DNA of 64,000 bases. Origin: Octopus sinensis (lineage: Eukaryota). Positions 9,791 to 30,462 of the stretch are shown piece after piece (position 1 is the stretch's first letter; each line of letters opens with the position of its first letter). The notes beneath the pieces were generated by a model, which was not told where the DNA came from, did no database searches, and saw only the letters and a list, made by a program, of their open reading frames with translations. A program made the position numbers and the translations under genes. The DNA lies in NCBI RefSeq assembly GCF_006345805.1, contig NC_043004.1, positions 558,001-622,000 of the forward strand. Direction: 5' to 3'.

Positions 9791-12484
9791 GTAAGTTGCT
9801 ATTCACTTATCTTTAACCAGGTGTTTCTTTCTTTTTTTTTTTTGTTTTAGGAAACATTGGGCCCAGACGTGATTGTGTCGTTAAGAGGTTTGCTTCCCAA
9901 CCATTTAATTCTGAGTTTAGTCCTGTGGACAAGTGCTTTCTACTATATATTTCTTTACTACCCACAAGGGGATAAAGTCGATTACATCGACCCCAGTGCG
10001 AAACTGGTACTTTATTTATCGACCCGAAAGGATGAAAGGCAAAGTCAACCTTGGTGGAATTTGAACTCAGAATGTAAAACAGACGAAATACCTATTTCTT
10101 TACTACCCACAAGGTGCTAAACACTGAGGGGACAAACAAGGACAGACAAACGGATTATGTCGATTATATCGACCTGAGTGCGTAACTAATTTATTTATCG
10201 ACCTCGAAAGGATGAAAGGCAAAGTTGACCTCGGCGGAATTTGAACTCAGAACATAACGGCAGACGAAATACCGCTAAGCATTTCGCCTGGCGTGCTAAC
10301 AATTCTGCCAGATCACCGCCTAATTAACAACCAACAACAATAGTAATTAATTAATTAAGAAACACAAAAAGCCTTGTGAAATCAGCTAGCCAGGGTTTCC
10401 TGGCTGGAATGTTGAATTGTTTTTTTGCTACTGTTCAAACTGGCAAAGTCAACAAAGCAGTTTAGTAAACTGTTTGGTGTAATCAAAGTTTGAATAAGCA
10501 CACGGCTTGAAAAAAGACAGAAACCAATCAAAGGGAGATAATTAAGTGTGCAGGAAATGCTGACATTCTTTTACAAGTGTTGAAAGTTCCAGAAACCAAC
10601 ATTGGAATTGGTTACCTTTAATTCTTGTGGTTTGTCTTTAATTCTTGCTAAGATGTACTTTGCAGAATGTGGACATGATGAAAACATCTCAGTGTTTGGT
10701 ATTCATATAGTCCCTGGAGGTTCTTAGGTTCTTTAAAAGATTGTTTTTGAAGCAAGCATATGGAACGTCTTTAACACAAGGTCTTGTAAAGGATCTTCCA
10801 TTTGATGTAGCTGATGGTCAGATCTTTAAGTCTCTAGATTAATACTGAAAGGGTTGATGTATGTCCCCTTGGGTTGCCTAAAGCTAGAAAGATGGATGTT
10901 GTGTTTAATTTGTGTGTGTGTTTGTGCCTTCTTGCATTGACATGACATTGCATGATAGTTGTAAATGAGTGCCACTGTCATACAAGCGGTGTCCTTCATT
11001 TTCAATCTGCTATGGAAAACCTGTTTGGCTATGGGGAAATATTACCATAGGAACCAGCGTCGCCTTACTGGCACTCGAGCCATGTGCTACTAGGGTATTA
11101 AGAGCACCATCCGAGCATGATCGTTGCCAGAGTGGCTATTTGGCCTCCGTGCCAGTGGCACGTAAAAGACACCATTCGAGCGTGATCGTTACCAGCATCG
11201 CCTTACAGGCACCTGTGCCGGTGGCATGTGTAAAAGATTCGAGCAAGGTCGTTGCCAGTACCACCTGACTGGCCCCCGTGCAGGTGGGACGTAAAAGCAC
11301 CCACTACACTCTCGGAGTGGTTGGCGTTAGGAAGGGCATCCAGCTGTAGAAACTCTGCCAGATCAAGATTGAAGCTTGGTGCAGTCATCTGGTTCGCCAG
11401 CCCTCAGTCATTCGTCCAACCCATGCTAGCATGGAAAGCGGACTTTAAATGACGATGATGATGATGATGAAACAGGTGAGTGTCAGTGACAAGAAGAGTG
11501 TCCAACCGTAGAAAAATCTGCCTCCACAGATTCTGTCTGACCCAAGCAAACCTGGAAAAGTGGACGTTAAATGACAACGATGATGATTGATAATGTAGTT
11601 TTAGATACTCTGTGTCTGAATAGAAGTTGGCATGATTGTAGCTGAAACATCTTTAATCATAAGTCTGCTTGAATTAAGGTTGACCTGCAGTTAAAAGCAA
11701 CAACTCATGTTTATTGATGCATTGAAGCACACATAAAACCGATTAGGTTCATGCAAACACACACACACACACACACACATGCAGACACACACACACACAT
11801 GCAGACACACACACACGCACACACACACACATTTGTACCTCTCCATTTGTACCTCTCAGAGAAGTAATTATTGATTATCTTTTATATTTCCGCAGCCAAA
11901 AGCATTGCAGTCAGCCGTAACTTAATGTCAGCCATCATTTCATGTGCATTTCTGTGCCTGTTTCCAGAGAGGAAGAAAGAGAAAACATCGCGGCTAAATA
12001 ATATTAATTTCTCTAATTTCTTTCGCTACCTTCCTCTGTAAGTAGCTAGAATTACCATATATTTTCTTCTTCTTCTTTAGTGTTCCTTCATATACACTCA
12101 TCCATTCATTGGAGAAAACACAGCAGCCACATATGAACATAGATATATATGTAAATGTAGGCGCAGGCATGGCTGTGTGGTATGAAGCTTCATTCCCAAC
12201 CACATGGTTCCAGGTTCAGTCCCACTGTTGGCCCCTTGGGTAAGTGTCTTCTACTATAGCCTGGAGCCGGTCAAAGCTTTGTTAGTGGATTTGGTAGAAT
12301 ATCAGCAATATTGAGGAATATGTTGTCATGAAACGCGTGTAGTAAAGTATATAATTTGGAATAAGAATTGAAGGTATTAATTTTGATTATTTTAATACTT
12401 AGTCCTATATGTATCTATTGTGGATAATGTCATTCAATGATGATTGGAATTGCTTGAGGGTAATTCTGTCTCTTAAACCTATCT

Positions 12485-12522
<38 letters not shown>

Positions 12523-15500
12523 ACACACTCACACACATAACAGGTTTCGTTCAGTTTCTGTCTATGAAATCCTCTCACAAAGCATTGGTCAACATGAGGC
12601 TCTACTAGAAGACACTTACCCAAAGTGACATGCAGTGGGACTGAAATTGGAACCATGTGGTTGGGAAGCAAACTTCTTACCACACAGCCATGTCCATGCC
12701 TATTGTTTGAGTAGAAAGGGATGGGTTGATGACTTTTGTCACTCAAACGTGAGAAAAAATATCGGAACATTTAAATATTTTTATTCCTCCTGTTTCTTTA
12801 ATGTTTCACCCTTTAAATGACTATTTTTAAATAGATGCACCATTTGATATTTTCTTATGGTGATATCTTTACCAAAACTTACTCCATCATATAAAGATCT
12901 CAGAAACCTATGAAGAAAATTAATGCCTTATTAAATATTTCTTTTAATTTTTTACTAATAATTTGTCTATTTTTCTATTTCCTTAGGCAATCCCAGTGTG
13001 CCAAACTGCGTTGTATTCTTCATTATTTCCGTAGAGTTGCTTCTGCTGGCCAGTATTTCACTGGAGAAATTGAAATACAACGACAGGTTAGCAGAAATTT
13101 TTGAAAAATATTTTCTCTTTTGATTGTTGCCAGTGCTGCCTGATTGGCTCCTGTGCCGGTGGCACGTAAAAAGCACCATTCGAGTGTGGTCCTTGCCAGT
13201 ACCGCTTGACTGGCTCCTGTGCTGGTGGCATGTAAAAAACACCATTTGAGCATGGTTGTTGCCAGTACCGCTTGACTGGCTCCTGTGCTTGTGGCATGTA
13301 AAAAACACCATTTGAGCGTGGTTGTTGCCAGTGCTGCCTGACTGGCTCCTGTGCCAGTGGCATGTAAAAAGTACCCACTACACTCTCGGAGTGGTTGGCA
13401 TTAGGAAGGGCATCTAGCTGTTGAAACATTGCCAGATTGGATTGGAGCCTGGTGCAGCCATCTGGCTTGCCAGTACTCAGTCAAACTGTCCAACCCATAC
13501 CAGCATGGAAAGCAGACATTAAACGACGATGACGATGATGAACTCAGTCGGGGCTCCATATAAGGTTTTGGGGACTCCAAGCAAGCAAAACAATAAATTG
13601 GGGATCCATGGTAGTATTTTAAGGGTCCATGAAAAAACAATTTTGCTTTAGATGTCTTTATTGCCAGAAACAGCCAGGTTTCTTTCTTCTGAGACGAATT
13701 CCTCGTTACTTCTGCTGTTTTTTTAATTGTTTGCAAAAGAAAACACTTCGTTATGTAAATTTTGATTTCTGTCAACTCTTTGTTCATTTTTAGGTAATGG
13801 AACCACGAAAACGTCCAACTCTGGAAACCTGGAAGAATTGCTCTACCAGTCTCTGTCCTATTTATGTTCGAGAAAATGGTAAAACCTATGATGCCAGTAG
13901 TGCCACTTTAAAGGTTGGTAAAAATTTTTTATATTTTGTCTTTTCTCTGGAATGTAATCCTTTCTCACATGTTTGCATCAAATATTTACCTCCAAGTAAT
14001 CTTCGATAATTTCATTATTATTATTATTATTATTATTATAATGTTACGAACTTTTGTTGGGCACAAAACATGGTGCTTTCGTACATCAAGGGAGGTTACT
14101 GTGTTATGGACGTTCTCTCAGGAGTTTTGTATATTGAAATGACAAATCTAAAAACCGATCCTATCATTTGCCTGAAGAAATATTTGAAGATCTTCCAGGG
14201 AAACATTTACGTTGATATATATTATATTATTTTTAATAAGCAGAGGTTACAGAGTGACTCAAGGGTTGAACGTTTCGTGAATGGCACTTTTATCTACTTG
14301 AGAAATAGTGAAAATCACAATTCTATATTTAACAGATGAAGAATTATGTAGATTATTTACATTTGACGGATATTTGACCTCATCTTGTTTTTTGTTAACA
14401 CAACGTTTCGTCTGATATACCCACCAGCCTTCATCAGGTGCCTTAGGGAAGTTTCGAACCTGAGTCCTCATTCCTTGGGTATTTTTCGATTTTATTATTA
14501 TTATTCAGGTCACTGCCTGGAATTGAACAAGTACCAGTTACACACTGGGGTAGATATAATTGACTTAATCTGTTTGTCTGTCCTTGTTTGTCCCGTCTGT
14601 GTTTAGCTCCTTGTGAGTAGTAAAGAAATAGGTATGATGTATTCTTGAGATAAAACTCTTCATTTTATGTGACTGCAGTTTACTCAGCTCTCAACGAATG
14701 ACCCTATGATGGATTGGCGTCCTGTTCAGGAAGATTATTGTATTCTTATTTCTTTATTGCCCACAAGGGGCTAAACATACAGGGGGACAGACAAGGACAG
14801 ACAAAAGGATTAAGTTGATTATATCGACCCCAGTGCGTAACTGGTACTTAATTTATCAACCCTCGAAAGGATGAAAGGCAAAGTCGACCTCGGCGAAATT
14901 TTAGGTCAGAATGTAAAGACAGATGAAATACCGCTAAGCATTTCGCCCGGTGTGCTTACGTTTCTGCCAGCTCGCCACCTTGTATTCTTGGTAAACTCTT
15001 ATGCCATGGAATCTGGTCAATGAACTCTATGAGTCCCAGGGCTCAAGACATTACTTAGCTGCCAGCTTCAGAGAGATGGTCATGACTGGAACAAGACTAA
15101 AGGTTCTCTTTTTTTTTGTTGAGAGGTGAAAATATTTAATTTAATTTGGTAGAAGTTTTAATTGTAATGTCTAGTAATTTTATCTCTTAATTAACGTATG
15201 CATTTAGTTTATTAATCTCAAATTTCAGATTGGATTTGCTAACAGATTTCTTGGAGGTCACATTTTAAGTAAAGGTAGATGCCAGGTAGGAAACGGTTGC
15301 TTTCTATTTTATGAATTAAAAATTTTTTTTATATTTGTATTTACAAGAGACATTTTGTTACGACTAAATTGTTGGCTTCACAGATTGAAGTGAAGATGTA
15401 TATTTTTGACGTCAATCTTTTACGTGTTTCAGCCAGTGGACTGTGGTCATGCTGGGGCAACGCCTTGAGTGCTTTAGGTGAACAAATCAACCTGAGTACT

Positions 15501-15929
15501 TATTTATATTTTAAGTCTGGTTCTTATTCTATTTGTTGTCTTTTGGTGAACCACTAAGTTACAGGGGTGTAAAGAAACCAACACTGGTTGTCAAGTGGTG
15601 GTGGGGGACAAACACAACACAAGCACACACACATACATAGACACATACATATATTCATTTGTATTTGTGCGTATCTATCTGTCTGTCTGTCTAGCTATCT
15701 CTCTGTCTATCTATCTATCTGTCTATCTCTGTGTCTGTCTATCTCTCTCTGTGTCTATCTGTGTCTGTCTGTCTCTCTATGTCTATCTATCTGTCTATCT
15801 ATCTGTCTATTTATCTATCTGTCTTGCTATCTCTTTGTCTATCTCTCTCTATGTCTATCTCTCTCTGTGTCTATCTCTCTCTCTCAGTGTCTGTCTACCT
15901 CTCTCTGTCTATCTGTCTGTCTGTCTGTC

Positions 15930-15968
<39 letters not shown>

Positions 15969-18900
15969 CTCTGTCTGTCTCTCTCTGTCTCTCTCTCTCT
16001 CTCTCTCTGTCTGTTTGTCTCTCTCTGTATTTTTTAGAATAATAGATAAGGAAAACAGAGTAGACGGGTAAGCTTTATTTAGTTTGCAGCACATTCTGTC
16101 TTCCCTATCAATTACAACATACTAAATGTGCACCGAAGAATTCCTTACCTAAATCCTGCGGATGACACTTGGCAGCCGTAAGTGGTAAACGTACTCTCAA
16201 GGCACACTCCCCGGGACATACCCAAAACAAAGTTGGGATATAACATTTTAAAATCTCCTATCTAAATTTTAATTTAAACAGGTGCAGGAGTGGCTGTGTG
16301 GTAGCTTGCTTTCCAACCACATAGTTCCGGGTTCAGTCCCACTGCATGGCACCTTGGGCCGACCAAAGCCTTGTGAGTGGATTTGGTAGACGGAAATTGA
16401 AAGAAACCCGTCGTATATATAGATATGTATATGTATTTGCATGTATGTGTTTGTGTGTCTGTGTTTGTCCCACTAACATCCCTTGACAACTGATGCTGAT
16501 GTGTTTATGTCCCTGTAACTTAGTAGTTCAGCAAAAAGAGACCGGTAGAATAAGTACTAGGCTTACAAAGACTAAGTCCTGGGGGTCGATTTGCTCGACT
16601 AATGGTGGTGCTCCAGCATGGCCACAGTCAAATGACTGAAACAAGTAAAAGAATAAAAGAATATATATACACACACACACTCACATGAACATACATGTAT
16701 CAGGTTGTTCATGAATACTACTCATAACATGTAGCAACCAAACCATGTGACATGTCTGCTGCCCAACAACCTAACTACATTCTTTTGTGAAGATGGCACA
16801 AAACTCAACATGCATGATTAAACTCTAACAATTAGTACTTTAATCAAATTTAATGAACGAAAATCCTTCATACCATTTCCCCGCCATAACCTACCATACA
16901 GTATAATTACCATTCAACAGAACTCTAGTTACCATTGAAAATTTTAAACTTAACCAGGGACTATATAACATCAAAAGCCCAATGATGGCTCAGCTGACCA
17001 CAACTTCAAAGTCACTGTCAAAACTATTCTTCTTGTTAAAGATTAATAAACATTATATATATATATATACTTCATTAAAAAGTAGTACAAATATCACAAA
17101 AACTGTTACTCAGAGTTTCACGTTCTCTTTTGTCAACAGTTTTGTTCTAAACAAAACTTTCTGACGAATAGGAACGTGAAACTCTGAGTAACAGTTTCTG
17201 TGGTATTTTTGCTGCTTTTTAATAAAGCATATTATTCTACCTTTGGTATTTGAGTACTATTTTTTTTGCCACCTTGTTCCACATTTATGTGCTTAGAGCG
17301 CCTACTTCTGCTGGTGACAAAGGGCATCTCGCTCAGAGTAAAAGTTAGACTGTATGATGCATGTGTACAAACTGCCATGCTACATGGCAGTGAAACATGG
17401 GCCGTAACTGCTGAGGACATGCATAAGCTTGCAAGGAATGAAGCCAGTATGCTCTGCTGGATGTCTAATGTGAGTGTGCATACATGACAGAGTTTAAGCA
17501 CCCTGAGAGAAAAGTTGGATTTAAGAAGCATCAGATATGGTGTGCAAGAGAGACGACTGCTGGTATGGTCATGTGTTGTGAATGAATGAGGACAGCTGTG
17601 TGAAAAAGTGTCACGCTCTAGCAGTTGAGGGAATCTGTGGAAGAGGTAGACCCAGGAAAACTTGGGATGAGGTGGTGAAGCACGACCTTCAAACATTGGG
17701 CCTTACCGAGGCAATGACTTGTGACCGGGACCTTTGGAGATATGCTGTGCTTGAGAAGACCTGACAATCCAAGTGAGACCATAGCCCATGGCCTATGCCA
17801 GTGGGTGTAACCAGCCCATTTATGAATATCCCTCATTCATTGGACAATAAACCTTGATTGTGAAGACCTATTGAGGCAAGTGAAATCAAAATTGCTGACG
17901 TGACCAAAGACAGTACCGCCTGATTGGTACACATCCGAATGTGGGGTGTAACCGGGCCACTTATGAGTATCCTTCATTCATTGGACAATGAACTTTGCTT
18001 GCAAAGACCTGTTGAGACAAGTGTAAACAAACCAAAATCGCTGATGTGGCTGATGACAGTACTACCTGATTGGTACTCATGCCAGTGGAACGTTAAAAGC
18101 ACATCCATGTGTGATCGCTGCCAGGGCCACGAATTGGCTCCCGTACTGGTGACATGGGAAAAGCACCATTCAAGCATGATCGTTACCAGTGTCAGCTTAC
18201 CAGCACATGTGCCAGTGGTACATGTAAATATAAGTAGAAAAAAAAAGAAAGTATTTTTGTATTCTTTAATGAAGGAGAAATCTCGTTCGTCTCTCAACCG
18301 CATAACCAATATTTTTAACCAAACTGTTCAATGTCTTTTCGTTTTATGTCGATTTTTTTTTTTTTGTCTTTAAAAAATTGTTTTTTGTTCTTTTTTTAAA
18401 ATCTCCAGGAGGAAATTATTTATATGACCTGTCCTGAATTGCTGGCCTCTACTCTCTTCATGGAAGCTATGGACGACAATGAAGCCATAACCATTAAAGG
18501 CTTTGAGAAGTTCTCTGAGTTTTCTGGTTATGGAGAGAATTTGAAGTTCTCTGGAAACTACTGTGATAAGGCTTCTGTGAGTAACTCTGAATGCTGCATA
18601 TTTTCCTTAAATAGTCAGAATGTTTGGCGGTGCTTTGTTATCACCTATGGCAACAAGGAATACATTTAACTTTCATTGTTGTCGTCATTATCATTGTTAT
18701 CACCACCACCACCATCATCATCATCATTTAATGTCCATTTTCCCTGCTGGTGTTGGGGTTGAACAGTTTGACAGGAGCTGGTATGGTCAGGGGCCATACC
18801 AGGTTCAATAGTCTGTTTGGGCTTGGTTTCTATGGCTTGATGCCTTTCCTAATGCCAACCACTACTGGTTGGGTGCTTTTTATGTGGTACCAGCACCAGT

Positions 18901-21900
18901 ACTTTTATGTGGCACTAGTGCCTTTTACATGACACCAGCACAGGTGCTTTTTGTGTGGCATCAGCCCTGGTGCTTTTATGTGGCACAAGTGCTTTTTATG
19001 TGACACCAGTACTTTTTATGTGGTACCAGTGTTTTTTATATGGCACCAGCGCCCTCACCAATGCTTTTTTTGTGGTATCTTGGTTTTAGGACCTCTATTA
19101 TGTTGTGGTGGCAGGTCTTCTCGAGTACAGCACTGCACCACATATTTCCGTCCTCTGTCATCTCCTTTGTAAGGTTCAGCATTTTGAGATTGGCCTTCTG
19201 TACTTTGTTCCATGTCTTCCTGGGTTTCCTTCTTCTATAACTTCTTTCCACTTTAAGTGATCATCTCTTCTTTATGCCACTGTCCTCATCCATCTGCATC
19301 ACAAGACCAAACTGGTGCCGTCTCCTCTCTTGCACACTGCCTGTAATTCCTCTTATGCCCAACTTCTCTCAATATGCCAATGCTCTGTCGCACATGGACA
19401 CAATGGATTTTTATACGTAAAAAGCACCATTCGAGCGTGGTCGATGCCAGTCCCTCCGGACTGGCTCCCATGCTGGTGGCATATGAAATACACCATATGA
19501 ATGTGGTTGATGCCAGTGCTGCCTGACTGGCTCCTGTGTTGGTGGCACAAAAAGCACCATTCGAGCATGGTTGTTGCCAGTGTCACCTGACTGGCCTCCG
19601 TGCCAGTGGCATGTAAAAAGCACCATTCAAGCGTGGTCAATGCCAGTACGCACACACACACACACACACACCACTATATCATCATCATCATCATTTAACA
19701 TCTGTGTTCCATGCTGGCATGGGTTGGACTGTTTGATGGTATTTGATGGGCCCAAGGACTGCATTGTGCTCCACTGTCTACTTAGGCATGGTTTCTATTG
19801 CAGGATGCCCATCCTAACGCCAACCATTTTACAGCATTGTACTGTGGAGATACATTCATTTTCTCTTAGAAGTGAACTGTTGTTTATTTGCTTTGCATTT
19901 AAATGTTTATATTTTTGTTTTCTTTTCCTCCAGCGGAAATCTGATGGCAATCTGGAGACAATGCTAAGTGCCATCAATACACTTCCGTACAAGTTTAACA
20001 ATCAACAAAAGCAATACATGGACCGATACCTGTTGCGAGATCTCAATAAATGTCTGGTTGGCTTTCAGCCAGCAATAAGCTCACTAAATCACACATCTGC
20101 AGATGAGGATTCCTTTCTCAATCAGGTTTGTGTCAACTCTGAGACACAAACTGTTACTACTGGAATTGTAGAAGACCCCATTCTTGTAACTAACGTTGAA
20201 CCCAGCAGTCTAACGCCTCCCCATAAAAGCAATGTTGCATCTAACACAGATGAGATTCTCATTGCCAATGAAGCAACAGATGTTGAAGGTTGGTTTTTGT
20301 GTTTTTTTGTTTATTTGTTAAAATATAAGCAATAATAAATCTTAGAGCAAGTTATAAACTGTAGCTGCAACACAACGTGAAGTATATTTGCCATTTAAAT
20401 ATGGCTAACCCCTAAGGGTGGATGCTACTGTAGCTTGTAACCTCAGGAGGACACCTCCTCCAGCTGGCTATTGACACACTTTCTGTGCCCAAGTGTGTCA
20501 ATAGCCAGCTGGAGGAGGTGTTCTCCTGGGGCTACAAGCTACAGTAGCATCCACCCTTAGGGGTTAGCCATATTTAAATGGCAAATATACTTCATGTTGT
20601 TAAAATATAGTTTACTTAGTAATTGATCTGGATGAGTAATTGTCAAATACCTGTATGTTGTTATTTGTTCCTTCTCAAGCCATGCTTGGCTCATAAGGGC
20701 TGGTTTCCCCGTTTCATTGGCATATATGTTCCCCACCTAGGCAGGATGCCGGTCTGTCGCAGGTGAGCTTCAAGATGCGGGAGGAAAGAGTGAGAGAAAG
20801 TTGTGGCGAAAGAGTCAGCAGAAGATCACTCTTACCTTCTGCTGGAGCCACGTGGATCTTAGGTGTTTTGCTCGTAAACACACACATCACCCAGTCTGAG
20901 ATTCGAACCCAGAGTCCTTTGACCGTGAGTCAACTGCTCTAACCACTATGCTGTGTGTCCACTAAATACCTGTGTGGGAACATTATATCCAACATGTTTT
21001 TGATATGTCATTTGTGTGTTGTTTTATATGTCTTTCTCTTTTTCAGCTCTGAACATAGACACACATACACCACATATTTACATCTTATTTCGAAATGATT
21101 TCCATTCATATTGATTTCTGTTAATTTTAAAAATGTTTATATTTGTAGGGGAAAGAAAAGAAGTGAAATTTGTCGAAGATATTGATAGTTTTGCCAAGCG
21201 TTTAACAAAAGAAATTCTCACCGAATCTCTATGTGAATTGAACCCTCAGTGTACTTGTAATAACTCTGATGATGTGGCTCCTCGTTTTGATAAAGAATTC
21301 AAGTCTATAGCAAAGTTTATACCAGAACATTGTTCCCTGTATGGCAGCGGGCTGTTGGCGTCTACCTTTGGTCATACAGCATCGATGGATTACTTGGATG
21401 TTGATTACCATGACTGGATCTCAAACTTTCGACGTCGAAGTTCAAACCTGAGTGATTTGACATCCCGTCGAAGTAGCTGCAGTACACGTTACAGCTCCTA
21501 CAGCGACATCAGTTCAGACTTTGAGGAATTGTACGAATCTTTCATGAAACGAGAACTCACGACTCGTCCTGGTACGATTCATGAAGAAATCGGCACATAC
21601 AATGTTCAGGATTTTGCTGCCAATTTTATAGAAAACCTACTCCAAGAGAGTGCTGCTATTGTTTATAATACAACCGGTATGCAGAACTTCCAAAATATTC
21701 ACCTTCCATCTAATCTGCACAAACCTGTGCCAATTAAACTTGGCCCTGAACCAAACATCGATCGTAATGCCAATGTCTCTTTTATATCAGAGGACACTGT
21801 CCAAGGTTATGTGGATCATTTATTTGAAGACATCAAGGTGACTGTTGTTGATTCAGAAGAAATTTGTTTACAGTGTGAAAATAAAGAACAACAAAGACAA

Positions 21901-24900
21901 TGTTCATTTTTCAGCAATTTAAGCACACTGAATGATCTTTCTGATGCTAGCATCATGTCTGTTGAGCCAGCTTGTAACATTTTCCGGCCAGCCATACCAC
22001 AGGCCATCTACAGTTATTCAGATTACCTCTCAAATGAAATTTTATGTGATTCTCTAAACGAAATAAGTACTCTAAATATTTCCTTTCTTGTCAGTTCGGT
22101 TTTAGCATCCAACAGTGAACAGAAAACCTCTCCATCGTCTACAGAGCTAGACTTAACTGCAGTTGCAGATAAATTAGTCAACCAAATCTTTCGGGAAGCC
22201 AAAGCTATAGTTAACTGCACTAACCCTTCCTCAGCTTCTTCCAGTCGACGACAATCACTATGGAGCAACTCTTCTTCATTGTCTGGTTGGATGAATAATA
22301 GCTTATCGTTTGGATGTTGGATTAATGATTTAAGTTCAAACATTCTCGACAGCAGCCTGAAAACAGCTCACAAAATTAGTATGTTTATTGATAGTATTGA
22401 ATGCCATGGTGTAAAAGCTGCCTATACCTCAAGTAGTTGCCAAGGAGTTTATCTCCCTGATTACGACAAATATGCCTTGACTATTACGAAGGAACTATTT
22501 ACAAATGCTTTGTTAGAACTGCACGAAAACTACCTTATTAACCCCTATTACCGACAGCTGCTACGGTACCAATATGGGCCCAGCTTGCAGAATATGACTA
22601 GTGTTGAAGACATGGACTGTTGTGGAGTTGGTTTTGACCACAAACTTGTTCCTCAGGAAGATCTTGCCAATTTCTATATGGAACTTGAGAGGCAAAGTTC
22701 TTTGAGTGAGCAGAATAAAACAATTGAACCAAGCATGAGTGGATTCCGCGATATTACACTTTCACAGTTTGCCGAGGAACTGATGCGCGCTGATGCAACG
22801 AGCCAGTCTTTGTTGAGCTTGCGCAATAATTGGCACCAGGAAAGTTTCCACAGCGGTAGTCTGAGTGGATTTAAAGACAACACTTTGGCAAGTTTTGAGG
22901 ACGAGTTGCTTAGGAGTCGTGTTGATTCTCCAGATTCCTTACTATATTTTGATATTAGGGACAATTTCCAACATCAAGAATCAGTGATCTCTCGAACTGA
23001 TATTTCCGATGACCCGACATCTAAAGATTTCAGTGAAATCCATTCTATGTCTTTGGACAGTGACGATAATCTATCAACATTTGCTGATCAGGTGTCAGAG
23101 GAAATAATGTACGAGTCTTTTGTAGATATTTTTGGAGTCATTCCATGTAACGTTCAGTTTAAATCTAATATATGCTTGCTATGTCTTGAAATGATTGCCG
23201 ATGAAATTGCCAAAAATGTGATCCATGTTGCCATTCTGACGTTGCAAAACCCTTCTTGCGACTACAGCGAAGATTTAACTCTGAACTTTTCACAATTTAC
23301 TCATCCATGCTTGCATAGAAAATTTCCTGTAATGTCTGTCATCGATTCCGAACCACAAAACATTCCACCACCTCTAACTCTAAATGACTTTTATGAAAAT
23401 ACTTCCAAAGAAATCATAGAATCTGCTATTTTAACCGTTTCTTCATGCAGAGACATTTACAAAGTAAGTCGAAATATTTTTTTTTAAATTATTTTTCTCT
23501 TTATTCTGTAATCCTTTCTTTTTCCACTGGTGAAGCAAAAACATAAACTCCTACGAGTGAAATGAATTAACTTCACTTTTGTATTTGTTCTGCAAGGTTC
23601 TTGATGTGAATTCATGAGTTGAAATAAATCTTGTCTTGGGAGGGTCATCATACTAATAACAACAGCACATGCACTGGTGCACTACCACTTCTTTATTGCT
23701 TGTCAGTTGGTTGAATATTTACCCAACTAAGTAATTGATCATTTGTTTAATGTGCTGATTAAACAGGTGATCAGGTGTTTGTTAGTCAAAGTCCTTTTGT
23801 TTCTTTATTGCCCACAGGGGCTACACACAGAGGGGACAAACAAGGACAGACAAACAGATTAAGTCGATTATATTGACCCCAGTGTGTAACTGGTACTTAT
23901 TTAATCAACTCCGAAAGGATGAAAGGCAAAATCAACCTCAGTGGAGTTTGAACTCAGTTGGTTAAATATTGGGTAAATATTTAACAATCTGACAAACAAT
24001 AAAGAAGTGATATTGCACCAGTGCGTGTGCTGTTGTTATTGGTGTGATGGCCCTCCCAAGACACAAAAGAGAGGAAGTCACTGACCTTCTCAGTGGCTTC
24101 CTCTATCCGCAAGGTCTACTCTGATGAATTTAGTTTTTCGTTTTACTGGAGAAAAACAGCAAAACATCAACAATAAACTGAAGGATGAATCATTGGGTGA
24201 ATTTTGTCAAAATGGTGTTTTCTTGGTTAGTTGAAACAAATATTGGTTTCAGATTTTGTCTCAAGGCCAGCAGTTTTGGTGGGGGGGGGTAGGAAAATCG
24301 ATTACACCAACCCCATTGTATGACCAGTACTTATTTTATTGACCTCTGAAAAGGGTGAAAGGCAGAGTCAACTTTGGTGGAATTGGAACTCAGAACGTAA
24401 AGACAGATGACATGCCACTAAGTGTTTGGCTCAATATGCTACCGATTCTGTCAGTTTGTTGTCTTTGCATGTTTTTTTTACCAAAATCTTAACGTCTGCC
24501 TACTTCTCTCTCTTACTGCTGTAAATCATTGGTCTATTGCCATACTGGGGCACTGCCCTCAAGTATTTTAATTGACTGTGTAGATAGTTGTATTGCTTTT
24601 AGCTTTAGTTATTATTTATTACTCTCATAAGAAATGAAGGGCAATTTGAGGCTACGGTAAGAGAGACTTGCTCAAGGTGCCCTACAATGAGATCAAGCTT
24701 GGAAGTAAATATTAAATATTCTTTTCTACTCTAGGCACAAGGCCCGAAATTTGGGGGGAGTTGGCCAGTTGATTAGGTTGATCCCCAGTACGCAACTGGT
24801 ACTTAATTTATTGACTCTGAAAGGATGAAAAGCAAAGTCGACCTTGGTGGAATTTGAACTCAGAATGTAAAGACAGACGAAATACCTCTAGGTATTTCAT

Positions 24901-25980
24901 TTGGCGTGCTAACGTTTCTGCCAGCTCACTGCCTGAATTACATATTAAATATTTATTTCTTTATTGCCCACAAGGGGACAAACAAGGACCGACAAAGGGA
25001 TTAAGTTGATTACATCGGCCCCAGTACGCAACTGGTACTTAATTTATCAATCCCGAAAGGATGAAAAGCAAAGTCGACCTTATTTCTTTACTGCCCACAA
25101 GGAGCTACACACAGAGGGGACAAACAAGGACAGACAAACAGATTAAGTCGATTATATTGACCCCAGTGCGTAACTGGTACTTATTTAATCAACCCCGAAA
25201 GGATGAAAGGCAAAGTCGACCTGGGCGCAATTTGAACTCAAAACGTAAAGATAGACAAAATACCGCTAAGCATTTTGCCTTGTGTGCTAACGATTCTGCC
25301 AGCTTGACGCCCGAAATAAATATTAAATCCCATTTAGAATAGGTGTGGTTGTGTGGTTAATAAGGCTGCTTCTTGACCATGTGGTCTTGGGTTCAGTCTC
25401 ATGGTGCAGCACCTTGAGCAAGTGTCTTCTACTGTAGCTCTGTGGGTGGATTTGGTTAATGGAAACTGAAAGAAGCCTGTTGTATGTGTATTTCTGTGTA
25501 CCCTGGTCTAGACATAATGTGAGTGTTGTAAATGAGCTTCACTGTTGTACAAGCGTGGGGAAAAGTTACTTTGCTTGGAAACAGGCAGGGAGTTGGCAGT
25601 AGGAAGGCGTGCAGCTGTTGAGAATCTGCCTCAGCGAATTGTTTGATCCATGCAATGTTAGAAGAGTTGCACGTTAAATGGTGATGGTGATGAGGATGAT
25701 GATTAGGATTTAGGATATGTCTTCTCTATCAATAAACCACATTAATTTTTTTATTGTTATGTATAGCAATTCTTTAGGTAAATTGTGAGCAAAGCATGAA
25801 ATATGGGAACACCGTAGAGAAAACAGGACTGATTGTATGTATTGCTTGTTTAGAAACTGGTTGGCATTAGGAAGGGCATCCAGACGTAGAAAACCATGCC
25901 AAGTTAGACTGGCGCCTGGTGCAGCCTTCCAACATAGTCAAACTGTCCAACTCATGCCAGCATGGACAACGGACGCTTGT

Positions 25981-26012
<32 letters not shown>

Positions 26013-26048
26013 GTGATGGTGATGGCGGCGACGACGAGGAGGAGGAGG

Positions 26049-26083
<35 letters not shown>

Positions 26084-29000
26084 TGCTCTTGCAATGGTTT
26101 TTATCATTGAATGAATATTCATTACATATAGCACACATATCAAACATTTTTTTAATTAAATTTTTTGTTCATGATGATGACAACGACCATCATCATCATC
26201 ATCACCGTCATCATCATTTAACATCTGTTTTCTATGCTGGTATGGGTTGGATGGTTTGACAGGATCCATCAAGCTGCAAAGCTGCATTGGGTGTCAGTCT
26301 CAGCTTTGGCAGGCTTTCCATAGCTGGATACCCTTCCTAACACTTGCCCTTCCTAATGCCATCTAGAATATCAAATATCCCCTTTCTAATGCCATCCAGA
26401 ATGTTAAATCACTGTAAGACATCCAAAATATTGTTGGTGGCAGGCTGAAATTCACCTGCCTCAAATCAACAGCACAGCACAGCACAGGTAAATTCATACA
26501 GCTTATACAAAATCCATGTACAAGGCTTTGGTCAGCCTGGGGCTATAGCACAAGACAGTTGCAGTGGGACTGGAACCAAAAGCCTGTGATAGGTAAGCAA
26601 ACTTCTTACCGTACAGCCATGCCTGTGCCTTAATGTTCTTCTTTTTTTAGGCACCAAGTCCAGAATATCGGACATAGGTGACCATGTCCTGCCACAATTC
26701 TCTGTTCTTTGTTCCCTATAACAGTTCCATTTCTTCCTGATGTTTAATGCCTCTTCCCTCCAACCAATTCTCCAAGTTTGCCATCCATATCCTCCTTCTT
26801 CCTCTGATTCTTTCCCCTTTAGTCTCTCCGGTCATCCCTAAATTCTCTAGGCCCTCTTTCCTCATCATGTGACCAAGAAATCTCAGTTACTTGGCCCTCA
26901 TCTCACAAAGTTTCCTATTTATCACAGCCTGGGTCATCACTTCGTTAGACCCTTTTATATGTCCAGGCTATCCTCAAAATTTTCCTTAAGAACCACATTT
27001 CATATCTCTCCAAGCACCTTCTCATTTCTAATGTTACAAACCATGCCTCACTTCCATATATCAACACAAGGTAGACATAGCACTCCAATGTATGGATCTT
27101 GGTCCTGCTTCTCAAAATGTTATACAATTTTGAGAATGCAGATTTTTACCAGCACCATTTGTCTTGATCTCGTTCACACATCTTATGTCTTCTGAGATCA
27201 AAGTTCCAAAATAGTTAAAGGATGATCCCTGCTTCATAATATTCTAATAAAATGAAACTTTACCAAGAACCTTAACATCTTCATCATACCTTTCTTTACA
27301 GAAATATTTCTCGCTTGAATTTACTATCTTTTACCCTCAAATTCAACTCCTATTTATTCACATTGTTTTGAGTTAATCCTGCATTATACAGTTCTGTATT
27401 TAAGAGATGAGAAATTATGTACATTATTTACATTATTTACCTTGTTTACATTTGATGGATATTTGTCCTCATCTTGTTTGTTGTTAACACAACGTTTCGG
27501 CTGATATACCCTCCAGCCTTCATCAGGTGTCTTGGGGAAATTTTGAAACTGGGTTCTTATTCCTAAGGTATTTTTCAATGTTGTCGTTGTTATTATTATT
27601 ATTATTATTATTATTAAGGTCACTGCCTGGAATCGAACTTGGAATCTTGGGTTTACTAGCCAGACCACTACGGCATATGCCTGTGGGCATCTGGCGTAGT
27701 GGTGACCTGAATGATAATAATAATAATAATAATAATAATAACATCAACAACATCGAAAAATACCTTAGGAATGAGAACCCAGGTTTGAAATTTCCTCAAG
27801 ACACCTGATGAAGGCTGGAGAGTATATCAGCCAAAACGTTGTGTTAACAACAAATAAGATGAGGACAAATATCCATCAAATGTAAATAATGTAATCTTGC
27901 ATTATCTCAGCAACAAGATTTTGATGATCTGTATGTTTGTCTTTAGAATGAAATTGTAGGGTAGGTGTGAGAGGCAGGATCTAATCAGTTTGAACGAAAA
28001 ACATGAATATTTGGGCCAGACATGGTCGGTTTAAATACTGAAAGGGTTAACCTTTCTTCCTTCTTGATTTGCAGAGTAATTGTCGAGCGTTAGTCAGTTC
28101 ATGTGGAATCCCTGGATCAAATCCCCAGCTTGAAGTTTTGCTCCAGTGGATTGTTGCTTCATACATCCAAACTCCAGTTTTTATATGTTACACAAAGCAA
28201 AGTGAAAAACTTGTCAGGGTGAGTAAAGAACACTCGTTTATTCTGTAATGCTTCTTTTTTTTTATAATCTTTGGTGGGCGTGGCCGTTGCCAGTACCACC
28301 AAACTGGCCCTCGTGCCGGTGGCACGTAAAAGCACCCACTACATTCTTGGAGTGGTTGGCATTAGGAAGGGCATCCAGCTGTAGAAACTCTGCCAGATCA
28401 GATTGAAGTCTGGTTCGCCAGACCTCAGTTGAATCGTCCAACCCATGCTAGCATGGAAAGCAGACGTTAAATGATGATGATGATGATGATGTTACATGAT
28501 CATGAGCAGACTATTGGATGTTGTTATACATCGCTGATCACTGTGCACTTTGCATTGTTTTAGCTTTTGAATGATGTCACTGCATTGGCTAGGTGAGCAG
28601 GCTAACACCTTCCCCTGATCAGGAGGCTAGTCCATTGCGGGTGTGACCCATTTACAGCTGAATGGATTGGAGCAATGCTAAATGAAGCATTTTGCTCAAG
28701 AACACAACACATTGCCCAGTCCAGGAATTGAACTCGGCATGTAAAAAGCATCATCCAAACGTGGCCGATGCCAGTACCCACTGACTGGCTCCTGTGCCAG
28801 TGACACATAAAAAGCACTATCCGAATGTGATCAATGCTAGGCCTACCTGACTGGCTCCTGTGCCAGTGGCATGTAAAATCCTCTCTCCAAATGTGATCAA
28901 TGCCAGGGCCGCCTGACTGGCTCCTGTGCTGGTGGCAAGTAAAATGTACCCACTACACTCTTAGAGTGGTTGGTGTTAGGAAGGGCATCCAGCTGTAGAA

Positions 29001-29821: not shown

Positions 29822-30462
29822 GACAGGCTTCTTTCAGTTTCCCTCTACCAAATCCACTCACAAGGCTTTGGTTGGCCTGAGGCTGTAGTAGAAGACACTT
29901 GCCCAAGGTGCCACACAGTGGGACTGAACCCGGAACCATGTGGCTGGTAAGCAAGCTACTTACCACACAGCCACTCCTGCGCCTCTGTTTGCATATTATT
30001 TATAATTTCCCAGTTTCTGTAAGAAAACGATATTCTCTGTCTCAATGTTGTTTCTCTTTCATGTTTCAGTTTCCCGATGTGGTCAGCATTGTCCAAGCAA
30101 AGTGCTGGACTGTTGGTGATCTGATGTGTACTGTACATAAGTTCTGTAACCAGGCTCTTGAGCAGTTGGACTCTGAAGGAATAATTACATTAGATTTATT
30201 CGAAGAAGTCCTCATATCTGCCCATCGTTGTCGTCCTGTTCTTGAAATGTCTCCAGATGACGCCACTGTTATTGCTGAAGTGCCTACAAGCGATTCCACT
30301 GTTGTCAACCTGCCACTTGAATATGTCACCTCTAGCAACAACAACAACAATGATGATGATAATGGTAATGTTGTTCCGGCTGTATCCGAAAATGACCAAA
30401 TCCTTCCTACCACTCTCCTCCCTTCTGAGAGTGATACAGTAATTGATGACGATCCTGACTGA
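9391..30462 (+). CDS. PARG-like: PARG-family (poly(ADP-ribose) glycohydrolase-like) gene, 10 coding exons, ~1397 aa, with ~845-aa insertion in the catalytic domain
   Basis: Exons 9385/9391-9790, 11896-12037, 12987-13086, 13794-13913, 15229-15285, 18409-18576, 19934-20288, 21149-23463, 28075-28218, 30070-30462. All have AG/GT ends with matching phases; total 4194 nt = 1398 codons. Motifs occur in canonical PARG order: IFPAVIDMAC..IPLC, ISCAFLCLFP..INF, KLRCILHYFRRV, FANRFLGG..Q/EE, PELL..NEAI..GFEKFSEFSGY, RDLNK..GF, LLQWIVAS, WTVGDL. Confidence 0.9.
9940..10320 (-). mobile_element. tRNA-head SINE family C, representative copy (also 14740-14980, 24950-25310, 52408-52620)
   Basis: Minus strand reads ggcgagctggcagaa.cgttagcacgcc..gagttcaaattccgccgaggtc..ctggggtcgat. 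Confidence 0.8.
11896..12037 (+). CDS. PARG-like: PARG-like exon 2
   Basis: TKSIAVSRNLMSAIISCAFLCLFPERKKEKTSRLNNINFSNFFRYLP; resembles canonical [22 protein letters not shown]..INF. Phase 1 to 2. Absent from the ORF track. Confidence 0.9.
12987..13086 (+). CDS. PARG-like: PARG-like exon 3
   Basis: QSQCAKLRCILHYFRRVASAGQYFTGEIEIQRQ (canonical EKLKTLFCYFRRV..G.VTFTRQ). Phase 2 to 0. Confidence 0.9.
13794..13913 (+). CDS. PARG-like: PARG-like exon 4
   Basis: VMEPRKRPTLETWKNCSTSLCPIYVRENGKTYDASSATLK; tag acceptor, aag|gttggt donor. Phase 0 to 0. Confidence 0.85.
14397..14442 (-). ncRNA. hammerhead ribozyme motif of the same family
   Basis: GGCAC CUGAUGA AGGCUG..CAGAC GAAAC GUU GUGUU; one mismatch in stem II. 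Confidence 0.65.
15229..15285 (+). CDS. PARG-like: PARG-like exon 5 (first half of catalytic loop)
   Basis: IGFANRFLGGHILSKGRCQ (canonical VDFANRFVGGGVTSAGLVQ); ttcag / cag|gtagg. Confidence 0.9.
15670..16030. repeat. compound (CTAT)n/(CTGT)n microsatellite; numerous (AT)n, (CA)n and (GAT)n tracts elsewhere
   Basis: Seen directly; it generates the spurious LSVYLSIC-type ORFs. Confidence 0.95.
16276..16660 (+). mobile_element. tRNA-head SINE family A, representative copy of many (e.g. 505-905 -, 3030-3535 +, 29560-29985 -, 59180-59535 -)
   Basis: caggagtggctgtgtggta..ggttcagtcccactgc head, microsatellite core, ...gactgaaacaagtaaaaga tail. Confidence 0.85.
17295..17850 (+). mobile_element. 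3' fragment of an RTE-type LINE
   Basis: RLYDACVQTAMLHGSETW...GRGRPRKTWDEVVKHDLQTLGL..DRDLWR, followed by 3' UTR. Confidence 0.85.
18409..18576 (+). CDS. PARG-like: PARG-like exon 6 (catalytic EE and Tyr-clasp region)
   Basis: EEIIYMTCPELLASTLFMEAMDDNEAITIKGFEKFSEFSGYGENLKFSGNYCDKAS; ccag / gtgagt. Confidence 0.92.
19115..19400 (-). mobile_element. 3' fragment of an RTE-type LINE
   Basis: RRRKPRKTWNKVQKANLKMLNLTKEM, homologous to 17582-17764. Confidence 0.7.
19934..20288 (+). CDS. PARG-like: PARG-like exon 7 (AINTL..RDLNK..GF, then start of the insertion)
   Basis: RKSDGNLETMLSAINTLPYKFNNQQKQYMDRYLLRDLNKCLVGF followed by an acidic linker; donor g|gttggt (phase 1). Confidence 0.88.
20372..20600. 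repeat. near-perfect fold-back palindrome, ~110-bp arms, 9-nt loop
   Basis: Arms 20372-20481 and 20491-20600 are reverse complements; same family as the termini at 36550-36941. Confidence 0.9.
21149..23463 (+). CDS. PARG-like: PARG-like exon 8: 2315-nt exon encoding a Ser/Asp-rich insertion with repeated amphipathic helices
   Basis: Lies within the 784-aa open frame 21133-23487. The tgtag acceptor matches the phase 1 of exon 7 and the aaa|gtaagt donor matches the phase 0 of exon 9. Confidence 0.88.
26650..27260 (-). mobile_element. decayed RTE-type LINE fragment
   Basis: KIHTLECYVYLVLIYGSEAW..EMWFLRKILRIAWT. Confidence 0.7.
27486..27531 (-). ncRNA. minimal type I hammerhead ribozyme motif (Penelope-type), intact core
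   Basis: GACAC CUGAUGA A GGCUG-loop-CAGCC GAAAC GUU GUGUU; stems I and II pair; stem III is the palindrome ACGU. Confidence 0.75.
27800..27845 (+). ncRNA. hammerhead copy with core mutation GAAA>AAAA (probably inactive)
   Basis: GACAC CUGAUGA AGGCUG..CAGCC AAAAC GUU GUGUU. Confidence 0.6.
28075..28218 (+). CDS. PARG-like: PARG-like exon 9 (degenerate GCGAFGG loop)
   Basis: SNCRALVSSCGIPGSNPQLEVLLQWIVASYIQTPVFICYTKQSEKLVR (canonical [25 protein letters not shown]..YFT); gcag / gtgagt. Absent from the ORF track. Confidence 0.85.
30070..30462 (+). CDS. PARG-like: PARG-like terminal coding exon
   Basis: FPDVVSIVQAKCWTVGDLMCTVHKF (canonical LTVGDVYKLL), an acidic tail, then TGA at 30460-30462. 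Confidence 0.88.
   Translation, partial: FPDVVSIVQAKCWTVGDLMCTVHKFCNQALEQLDSEGIITLDLFEEVLISAHRCRPVLEMSPDDATVIAEVPTSDSTVVNLPLEYVTSSNNNNNDDDNGNVVPAVSENDQILPTTLLPSESDTVIDDDPD

What the first reader, a model, noticed from the sequence alone, without database searches (positions are those of the whole stretch)
15229..28218. PARG active site partly rewired: QEE kept, other catalytic motifs lost
Compared with canonical PARG: VDFAN>IGFAN (the Asp equivalent to human D737, one of three critical acids, is Gly at 15232-15234); GGG>GGH (15253-15261); AIDA>AINT; and the diphosphate-binding loop TGNWGCGAFGGD>ALVSSCGIPGSN. Q-E-E (15283-15285 plus 18409-18414) and the clasp Tyr (FSGY) remain. The reading frame is intact over 10 exons, so this looks like a maintained pseudo-enzyme, PAR reader or altered-specificity hydrolase, probably a paralog of the housekeeping PARG.
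Basis: partly seen in the sequence, partly recalled or inferred. Interest (0 to 1): 0.72.

Follow-up and report, generated by a model that had tools for sequence, protein, structure and literature searches.

The report
Dead PARG domain in AKAP-like scaffold
This octopus gene encodes a large scaffold protein built around a poly(ADP-ribose) glycohydrolase fold that has lost its active site and ligand pocket but is still strongly conserved; it belongs to an uncharacterised invertebrate family that links true PARG enzymes to the vertebrate kinase-anchoring proteins AKAP3, AKAP4, AKAP11 and SPHKAP.

Summary
The protein is 97% identical to Octopus bimaculoides LOC106877645, which is annotated as "uncharacterized".

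The site is more degraded than reported. Besides D737>G, GGG>GGH and D825>N, the diphosphate loop has lost three residues including N869, and F875 is Pro. The adenine contacts are also changed: E727>Y and F902>K. Q754/E755/E756, N740 and Y795 remain.

The same states occur in Argonauta and in a third cephalopod transcript. dN/dS is 0.07 in the PARG core. 75-78 of 78 canonical PARG representatives keep each of the single-residue sites.

The gene is not a one-off paralogue. It belongs to a bilaterian family of PARG-like proteins with a 400-2600 aa insert at one fixed loop. Scallop, abalone, limpet, brachiopod, echinoderm and amphioxus members keep the catalytic motifs. Cephalopods and arthropods lost them independently.

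The part after the insert matches the AKAP4 C-terminus (hhalign 98%). The insert carries AKAP-type amphipathic helices and RRxS sites.

Best reading: a PARG pseudo-enzyme module inside an AKAP110-type scaffold. PKA anchoring is inferred, not shown.

The parts
9391..9790 (+). Coding exon 1. Starts at the ATG (MGVRKVIFPCDLPHW...). Contains the family-specific N-terminal FPCDLPxW motif and the start of the PARG helical domain.
   Evidence: Gene model. The start agrees with the O. bimaculoides protein P0001.
11896..12037 (+). Coding exon 2 (PARG_cat_N helical domain).
   Evidence: AG/GT boundaries, frame kept. An exon of the same size is present in Argonauta.
12987..13086 (+). Coding exon 3 (AKLRCILHYF motif).
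13794..13913 (+). Coding exon 4. GKTYD replaces the canonical GTIED. TAT at 13887-13889 is Tyr at the human E727 position (adenine N6 contact).
15229..15285 (+). Coding exon 5, IGFANRFLGGHILSKGRCQ. D737>G (15232-15234), N740 kept, GGG>GGH (15253-15261), Q754 (15283-15285).
18409..18576 (+). Coding exon 6. E755/E756 are kept (18409-18414), and Y795 is kept in FSGY (18520-18531).
19934..20288 (+). Coding exon 7. AINT (19970-19981, D825>N), LLRDLNKCLVGF, then the start of the insert. There is a possible unused alternative donor at 20125/20126.
21149..23463 (+). Coding exon 8, 772 aa and the bulk of the 847-aa insert.

Amphipathic AKAP-like helices:
- 21151-21240 (ERKEVKFVEDIDSFAKRLTKEILTESLCEL)
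- 21604-21663
- 22153-22212
- 23071-23133
- 23182-23244 (CLEMIADEIAKNVIHVAILTL)
- 23380-23439

RRxS clusters: 21403-21483 and 22240-22266.

Conserved acidic module SSDFEELYESF: 21511-21543.
   Evidence: Argonauta has the same single large exon. The insert is in frame in an RNA-seq contig of another cephalopod (L002).
28075..28218 (+). Coding exon 9. Degenerate diphosphate loop ALVSSCGIPGSN (28087-28122). PQLEVLLQWIVAS (28123-28161). CYTKQ with Lys at the F902 position (28195-28197).
30070..30462 (+). Coding exon 10. End of the macro fold (WTVGDL, 30106-30123), an acidic Asn/Asp-rich tail, and the stop codon TGA at 30460-30462.
   Evidence: The tail evolves faster (dN/dS 0.36).

Best explanation
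The gene encodes the octopus member of an old, uncharacterised bilaterian family.

**Architecture.** In this family a complete PARG catalytic domain (helical accessory domain plus macro fold) is split by a very long, mostly disordered insert. The insert sits in the surface loop between the LRDLNKxxVGF helix and the diphosphate-binding loop.

**The PARG module.** The two halves still fold together into a PARG-like module. In cephalopods that module has lost what PAR hydrolysis needs, and most of what canonical ADP-ribose binding needs:
- D737>G
- third Gly of GGGx7QEE >His
- D825>N
- N869 deleted
- F875>P
- E727>Y
- F902>K

It therefore most likely acts as a non-catalytic structural or interaction module, a pseudo-enzyme.

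**The insert.** It carries about a dozen amphipathic helices. Several fit the docking consensus for the PKA regulatory subunit. It also carries clustered RRxS sites.

**Link to AKAPs.** The piece after the insert is homologous to the conserved C-terminus of vertebrate AKAP3, AKAP4, AKAP11 and SPHKAP (Pfam AKAP_110).

**Likely function.** The protein most likely works as an A-kinase-anchoring-type scaffold.

**Shown:** gene structure; fold; residue states; conservation; family membership; homology to the AKAP4 C-terminus.

**Inferred:** loss of hydrolase activity; loss of canonical ADPr binding; PKA anchoring.
For: **Gene model.** Intact 10-exon model with all GT-AG introns. 97% identical to O. 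bimaculoides LOC106877645. Argonauta has the same exon structure.

**PARG homology.** Pfam PARG_cat_N and PARG_cat_C. PDB PARGs at E 1e-39 to 1e-42.

**Structure.** AF2 model of P0001 aa 121-1320: PARG halves at pLDDT 65-97, insert below 50 but helical. Foldseek against PDB gives 42 significant hits, all PARG. The best is E 6e-20, rmsd 2.4 A over 247 columns.

**Residue states.** From alignments. Residue roles are taken from PMC7050489.

**Comparison with canonical PARGs.** Canonical representatives are nearly invariant at every changed site.

**Selection.** dN/dS 0.06-0.10. The substituted residues are identical in three cephalopods.

**Family.** Long-insert members with intact motifs occur in Mizuhopecten, Haliotis, Patella, Biomphalaria, Lingula, Tubulanus, Acanthaster, Diadema, Branchiostoma and Saccoglossus.

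**AKAP link.**
- hhalign of the family C-terminal profile against a real AKAP4 C-terminal fragment gives prob 98.2%, E 6e-14. A canonical PARG profile gives 91%, E 1e-6.
- The window piece against AKAP4 by BLASTP: 34% identity over 65 aa, E 1e-12.
- The only non-PARG Pfam families hit by more than one of the 33 family members scanned are AKAP_110 (7 members, best 4e-6) and SmAKAP (2). RII_binding_1 is among four single-member hits.
- AKAP consensus motif: 7 hits in the insert against 1.2 expected. RRx[ST]: 4 against 0.35 expected.
- Published report that the C-termini of AKAP3, AKAP4, AKAP11 and SPHKAP are PARG macro remnants (PMC11377751).
Against: **No biochemistry.** Q754/E755/E756, N740 and Y795 are retained across cephalopods. 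This could mean residual or altered catalysis or ligand binding.

**The AKAP evidence is weak for the window protein itself.**
- All AKAP Pfam hits are below the gathering thresholds.
- None falls on the window protein.
- The insert has no PDB sequence match.
- The RII-binding consensus is loose.

**The AF2 insert helices have low confidence.** The AF2 input was the O. bimaculoides orthologue lacking its first 120 residues, with a 15-row alignment.

**Loss of ADPr binding is only inferred.** It rests on residue identities, not on a modelled complex.
Confidence: 0.65

Rival explanations
1. The protein is an altered-specificity hydrolase or an ADP-ribose/PAR reader. The retained QEE, N740 and Y795, together with a remodelled but conserved pocket (G, H, Y, K, SSCGIPGSN), would bind or cleave a different ADP-ribose-like or nucleotide ligand.
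For: The QEE, FAN and FSGY motifs are conserved in all three cephalopods, and the replacement residues are themselves invariant. Purifying selection on the core is very strong (dN/dS 0.066). PMC11377751 proposes PAR binding for the AKAP macro remnants.
Against: Contacts described as essential for adenine and diphosphate binding are gone: F902>K, E727>Y, F875>P, N869 deleted. Arthropod members also lost QEE (now QES or QEC) yet are maintained, so the family tolerates complete loss of the site.
Confidence: 0.17
2. It is an ordinary active PARG, either the housekeeping enzyme or a tissue isoform, and the substitutions are tolerated.
For: The catalytic Glu pair is present and the fold is predicted with confidence.
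Against: 75-78 of 78 canonical representatives keep each of the single-residue sites changed here. UniProt lists D737 as an active-site residue (from my own knowledge). The diphosphate loop is shortened by three residues. The protein falls outside the canonical PARG clade.
Confidence: 0.03
3. It is a decaying pseudogene or a gene-model artefact.
For: The active site is degraded and the introns are full of repeats.
Against: There is no stop codon or frameshift over 4194 coding nt, and all 9 introns are GT-AG. The exon structure is the same in Argonauta. The mRNA is assembled in a third cephalopod. dN/dS is about 0.1 at dS 0.81.
Confidence: 0.02

Closest known systems
Canonical poly(ADP-ribose) glycohydrolase (human PARG Q86W56; PDB 4B1H, 6OAK; Drosophila 8ADJ)
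   Same: Both Pfam domains are present (PARG_cat_N and PARG_cat_C). About 33% identity over the pre-insert part (aligned to rmsd 2.4 A) and the same predicted fold. Q754/E755/E756, N740 and Y795 are conserved.
   Different: D737>G, G746>H, D825>N, I726/E727>T/Y, F875>P, F902>K, and G868-W870 deleted. An 847-aa insert replaces a spacer that is 11-36 aa in most canonical PARGs. There is no long N-terminal regulatory region. The protein lies in a separate clade.
Vertebrate AKAP_110 family (AKAP3, AKAP4, AKAP11, SPHKAP), whose C-termini were reported as PARG macro-domain remnants (PMC11377751)
   Same: The C-terminal ~80 residues (PQLxxxLQWIxAS...WTVGDL...) are homologous: hhalign 98.2%, BLASTP E 1e-12. 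Both are long, Ser-rich, helix-studded scaffolds with AKAP-type amphipathic helices. Both lack catalytic residues.
   Different: [quoted passage not shown] Its AKAP Pfam similarity is sub-threshold. PKA binding is untested.
Long-insert PARG-like proteins of other invertebrates (e.g. Mizuhopecten LOC110449053, Haliotis, Lingula LOC106166730, Acanthaster LOC110980795, Branchiostoma, Saccoglossus LOC100367685), all annotated as uncharacterised or auto-named PARG
   Same: Same architecture, same insert position, and shared insert modules: the IDSFAKRL helix, W..F.RRRSS...SSDFEELYESF, and VQDFAANFIENLLQES...Q.F....KP.P.
   Different: Those members keep VDFAN, GGG, QEE, AIDA and ATGNWGCGAFGGD. The cephalopod branch does not, and it is long in the tree.
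Arthropod subgroup of the same family (Penaeus, Limulus, Ischnura, Coccinella, Haemaphysalis)
   Same: Also a catalytically degenerate long-insert PARG-like protein.
   Different: A different, independent set of losses: VCFSS, GGx, QES/QEC, Y795 region deleted, GNWGCG kept but AFGGD lost.

Membership tests
Active canonical PARG (EC 3.2.1.143) | PARG catalytic-domain fold (helical accessory domain plus macro core) | tested here: met
   Pfam E 1e-22 and 4e-45. AF2 plus Foldseek hits are all PARG structures, best E 6e-20.
Active canonical PARG (EC 3.2.1.143) | Catalytic signature GGGx{6,8}QEE preceded by a conserved Asn (PMC7050489) | tested here: not met
   The window has GGHx7QEE. The third Gly is His (15259-15261). 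Asn and QEE are present. G746 is Gly in 78/78 canonical representatives.
Active canonical PARG (EC 3.2.1.143) | Acidic residue D737 in VDFAN | tested here: not met
   Gly at 15232-15234. Asp in 75/78 canonical representatives.
Active canonical PARG (EC 3.2.1.143) | Diphosphate-binding loop TGNWGCG[A,V][F,Y]GGD | tested here: not met
   SSCGIPGSN with a 3-residue deletion; the G[A,V][F,Y] patch is G-I-P.
Active canonical PARG (EC 3.2.1.143) | PAR hydrolysis in vitro | not testable with these tools
   Needs an enzyme assay.
ADP-ribose-binding macrodomain (reader) | Adenine pocket: stacking Phe (F902), E727 contact to N6, Y795 | tested here: not met
   F902>K (28195-28197) and E727>Y (13887-13889). 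Only Y795 is kept.
Bilaterian long-insert PARG-like family (unnamed) | N-terminal FPCDLPxW start, AKLRCILHYF, LLRDLNKxxVGF, a >350-aa insert before the diphosphate loop, and LQWxxAS...WxVxxL after it | tested here: met
   All motifs are present. Top hit to the family profile at 574 bits. It groups with the long-insert members of other lophotrochozoans in the NJ tree (52% bootstrap for that grouping; cephalopod clade 100%) and lies outside the canonical PARG clade (93%).
AKAP_110 family (Pfam PF05716) | Conserved C-terminal domain of AKAP3/4/11/SPHKAP | tested here: inconclusive
   hhalign of the family profile against the AKAP4 fragment: 98.2%, E 6e-14. Window piece by BLASTP: E 1e-12. The Pfam HMM hits only 7 of 33 family members, all below the gathering score, and not the window protein.
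A-kinase anchoring proteins (functional class) | Amphipathic helix that binds the R-subunit D/D domain | tested here: inconclusive
   7 consensus matches against 1.2 expected, all in predicted helices. SmAKAP hit on the orthologous helix of P0003 at 26.3 bits against a cutoff of 27. Binding itself is not testable here.

The most novel reading that the evidence does not exclude
The ancestor of the vertebrate AKAP3/AKAP4/AKAP11/SPHKAP anchoring proteins was a catalytically competent PAR glycohydrolase with a PKA-anchoring insert. Many living invertebrates (scallop, abalone, brachiopod, sea star, amphioxus) would still make such a PARG-AKAP enzyme that couples cAMP/PKA signalling to ADP-ribose removal. 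Cephalopods, arthropods and vertebrates would each have turned it independently into a pure scaffold. On this reading the octopus gene is a snapshot in which the whole PARG fold survives as a pseudo-enzyme.
Probability: 0.35. Interest if true: 0.75.

Novelty: new variant of a known kind. Interest (0 to 1): 0.55.

Why it matters
Macrodomain pseudo-enzymes, and the PARG-like remnant in human AKAPs, are already known. What I did not find described in the searched literature is the full-length intermediate: a complete PARG catalytic domain split by an AKAP-type insert.

This intermediate is widespread in invertebrates. The catalytic motifs are intact in many phyla and were lost independently in cephalopods and arthropods.

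This makes one origin question testable. AKAP11 and SPHKAP are proteins of current neuropsychiatric and metabolic interest. Were their ancestors PKA-tethered PAR hydrolases?

It also provides natural paired controls for biochemistry: active-looking scallop or abalone members against the dead octopus member.

For the octopus gene itself the practical message is an annotation correction. It should not be called an active PARG.

Tried and rejected
1. **A second PARG in the window.** tblastn with a PARG probe on both strands found only this gene.

2. **Finding the canonical octopus PARG.** The word-indexed homologue searches returned few PARGs and no cephalopod one. Name look-ups on 20 of the hits of the representatives search (two batches of ten, mainly non-family hits) gave canonical PARGs for Mytilus, Sinanodonta and Haliotis, but none for a cephalopod. 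This remains unverified.

3. **O. bimaculoides genomic locus.** Not on record by exact look-up, so dN/dS used Argonauta and an RNA-seq contig. dS against the latter is saturated.

4. **Insert-deleted constructs.** I used contiguous substrings instead.

5. **Pfam on the window's own insert and helices.** No hit even at E 10. PDB sequence search of the insert also gave nothing.

6. **A remnant of the PARG N-half in the AKAP4 N-terminus.** hhalign probability was 0.9%, so I rejected this as unsupported.

7. **Literature on 'pargl' or 'PARG-like'.** Only gene-list mentions of zebrafish pargl, with no functional study.

8. **Pseudogene or artefact reading.** Rejected.

Full report
**What is in the window.**

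The window is cephalopod genomic DNA. On the + strand I reconstructed a 10-exon coding model:

| Exon | Coordinates |
|---|---|
| 1 | 9391-9790 |
| 2 | 11896-12037 |
| 3 | 12987-13086 |
| 4 | 13794-13913 |
| 5 | 15229-15285 |
| 6 | 18409-18576 |
| 7 | 19934-20288 |
| 8 | 21149-23463 |
| 9 | 28075-28218 |
| 10 | 30070-30462 |

Every intron is GT-AG and the frame is open for 1397 codons. The product is 97% identical to Octopus bimaculoides 'uncharacterized protein LOC106877645 isoform X2'. It is 81% identical to an Argonauta hians protein and 63% identical to a protein from an RNA-seq assembly (SRR8281676). The Argonauta locus has the same ten exons, with identical sizes for exons 2-7 and 9. The RNA-seq contig carries the whole reading frame uninterrupted, insert included. 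tblastn found no other PARG-like gene in the window.

**Checking the observation.**

Pfam gives PARG_cat_N (1e-22) and PARG_cat_C (4e-45). phmmer against PDB gives Drosophila, human, mouse, rat and Tetrahymena PARGs at E 5e-42 to 5e-26. The printed alignment to human PARG fixes the positional equivalences.

For numbering I used the anchors E756, Y795 and F902 given in the review PMC7050489 and counted along the PDB sequence. The octopus states are:

| Human PARG position | Octopus state |
|---|---|
| I726/E727 | T/Y |
| D737 | G |
| N740 | kept |
| G744-G746 (GGG) | GGH |
| Q754/E755/E756 | kept |
| Y795 | kept |
| D825 | N |
| T867 | S |
| G868-N869-W870 | deleted |
| G871 | S |
| A874 | I |
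| F875 | P |
| G877 | S |
| D878 | N |
| F902 | K |

According to the review, the adenine is stacked on F902, and the G[A,V][F,Y] patch of the diphosphate loop strains the distal ribose. Both are gone. The site is therefore degraded for ligand binding as well as for catalysis.

**Is this normal for PARGs?**

No. An exhaustive profile search of 1.84 billion representatives found 4586 PARG-domain proteins. In the 78 canonical-type sequences among the session's hits the counts are: E727 76/78, D737 75/78, N740 74/78, G746 78/78, QEE 77/78, Y795 76/78, D825 77/78, and GNWGCG[AV][FY] 67/78. The cephalopod combination occurs nowhere else among those hits.

**Is it maintained?**

Yes. Nei-Gojobori dN/dS between the window and Argonauta (dS 0.81):

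| Region | dN/dS |
|---|---|
| Whole gene | 0.099 |
| PARG core (aa 80-373) | 0.066 |
| Macro piece after the insert | 0.060 |
| Insert | 0.096 |
| Acidic tail | 0.36 |

Against the third cephalopod dS is saturated, yet every substituted residue (Y, G, H, N, S[ST]CGIPGSN, K) is identical. The site was rewired once, early, and then frozen.

An AlphaFold2 model was built of the O. bimaculoides orthologue, residues 121-1320 with a 15-row alignment. It gives pLDDT 65-97 for both PARG halves and below 50 for the insert, which nevertheless contains about 13 helices. Foldseek against the PDB returns 42 significant hits, all PARG structures. The best is E 6e-20 with rmsd 2.4 A over 247 columns.

**What family is it?**

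The 'insert' is not a peculiarity of octopus. The same architecture is shared across the family:
- a start at FPCDLPxW with no N-terminal regulatory region;
- AKLRCILHYF;
- LLRDLNKxxVGF;
- then 400-2600 residues;
- then the diphosphate loop and LQWxAAS...WxVxxL.

It is found in Branchiostoma, Saccoglossus, Acanthaster, Diadema, Lingula, Tubulanus, Mizuhopecten, Haliotis, Patella, Lottia, Plakobranchus, Biomphalaria, Macrostomum and throughout arthropods. In most canonical PARGs the same spacer is 11-36 residues.

In an NJ tree of the N-terminal 355 columns the canonical PARGs form one clade (93% bootstrap). That clade includes the canonical molluscan ones from Haliotis, Mytilus and Sinanodonta. 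The long-insert proteins lie outside it. The cephalopods form a long branch among lophotrochozoan long-insert members.

The genus Haliotis has both a canonical PARG (P0077) and a long-insert protein (P0042). The two are therefore old paralogues.

The non-cephalopod molluscs, the brachiopod, the nemertean, the echinoderms and amphioxus keep VDFAN, GGG, QEE, AIDA and ATGNWGCGAFGGD. The loss is thus cephalopod-specific. Arthropods lost the site independently and differently (VCFSS, GGx, QES/QEC, AFGGD replaced).

All these proteins are annotated as 'uncharacterized', auto-named 'poly(ADP-ribose) glycohydrolase', or 'serine-rich adhesin-like'.

**The AKAP connection.**

Apart from the PARG families, the only Pfam families hit by more than one member are A-kinase-anchor families. 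All the hits are below threshold.
- SmAKAP hits the first insert helix of the third cephalopod (26.3 bits against a cutoff of 27) and of Saccoglossus.
- AKAP_110 positions 607-676 of 690 hit the piece after the insert in several members.
- Over 33 members, AKAP_110 hits 7 (best 4e-6) and SmAKAP 2. RII_binding_1 is one of four families hit by a single member.

I used a fragment recalled from memory only as a probe and fetched real AKAP4 C-terminal sequences with it.
- hhalign of the family's C-terminal profile against one of them gives 98.2% probability, E 6e-14, over 81 columns.
- An equally sized profile of canonical PARG C-termini gives only 91%, E 1e-6, over 62 columns.
- The window's own piece aligns to AKAP4 at 34% identity over 65 residues, E 1e-12.

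[quoted passage not shown] The invertebrate family found here still has that N-terminal half. It is closer to the AKAP C-terminus than canonical PARG is. It is therefore the likely source lineage.

Within the octopus insert:
- The RII-docking consensus [AVLISE]xx[AVLIF][AVLI]xx[AVLI][AVLIF]xx[AVLISE] occurs 7 times against 1.2 +/- 1.2 in shuffles.
- RRx[ST] sites occur 4 times against 0.35 expected.
- All motif hits lie in predicted helices.
- Several insert modules are conserved from octopus to amphioxus and hemichordate.

**Best explanation, and what is not shown.**

I conclude that the finding is a genuine, conserved PARG pseudo-enzyme module embedded in an AKAP110-type scaffold protein. 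Loss of hydrolase activity and of canonical ADP-ribose binding is inferred from residue identities. PKA anchoring is inferred from homology and motifs, and the window protein itself gives no AKAP Pfam hit.

The retained QEE, N740 and Y795 leave room for an altered ligand or activity, which I put at about 0.17. I could not confirm a canonical PARG in the octopus genome with the tools available.

I found no paper describing the full-length PARG-AKAP architecture in invertebrates. That search covers only the held library.

Noticed in passing
window 38397-42257 (- strand): Ty3/Gypsy-like LTR retrotransposon coding region. An 826-aa gag-protease-RT-RNaseH ORF lies at 39777-42257. Two integrase ORF pieces lie at 39133-39660 and 38397-39236, separated by frameshifts. 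The region also shows strong AT/GC skew in the composition profile.
   Followed up: no
window 34574-35831 (- strand): Three overlapping ORF fragments of a non-LTR (LINE-type) reverse transcriptase, broken by frameshifts.
   Followed up: no
window 2511-2663, 4404-4561, 8311-8464, 13124-13370, 18872-19009, 19418-19647, 28753-28945, 46949-47193, 49712-49846, 53404-53608, 62811-63052: A dispersed, SINE-like repeat made of 2-4 tandem units of ~66-70 bp (core ...GGCACGTAAAAAGCACC...CCTGACTGGCTCC...). It occurs in both orientations, and several copies sit inside introns of the PARG-like gene.
   Followed up: no
window 15672-16028 (intron 5): A long (TCTG/TCTC)n microsatellite directly downstream of the exon that carries the IGFAN/GGH motifs. 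It produces spurious long ORFs.
   Followed up: no
window 20125/20126: AATCAG|GTTTGT is a phase-0 potential donor inside exon 7. It could splice to the phase-0 exon 9 and skip the whole 850-aa insert, giving a compact pseudo-PARG. There is no evidence that it is used. Insert-less family-like proteins of 470-513 aa do exist in other taxa (P0010, P0048, P0050).
   Followed up: partly
related proteins P0008, P0013, P0020, P0054-P0078, P0146, P0166 (arthropods): A pan-arthropod subgroup of the same long-insert family (shrimp, tick, damselfly, beetles, millipede, horseshoe crab) has lost the PARG catalytic motifs independently and in a different way (VCFSS, GGx, QES/QEC). It keeps GNWGCG.
   Followed up: partly
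P0036 (AKAP4 fragment, Lemmus) vs window aa 255-307: The AKAP4 N-terminal stretch ICFVDVS...KLNLENLEEKEIIVIKDTEK lines up loosely with PARG IGFANRF...TLFMEAMDDNEAITIKGFEK. This hints that vertebrate AKAPs may also keep a trace of the PARG N-half. hhalign probability is only 0.9%, so this is unsupported.
   Followed up: partly
window 30337-30459 (C-terminal tail, aa 1326-1397): An acidic, Asn/Asp-rich tail that evolves about 4-6 times faster (dN/dS 0.36) than the rest of the protein. It is greatly expanded by poly-Asn in Argonauta.
   Followed up: no
cluster of P0121 (Mytilus canonical PARG): The 90% cluster of the Mytilus canonical PARG also contains many eS24 ribosomal-protein entries. This suggests a shared or chimeric gene model (PARG fused to or overlapping RPS24) in mussel annotations.
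   Followed up: no
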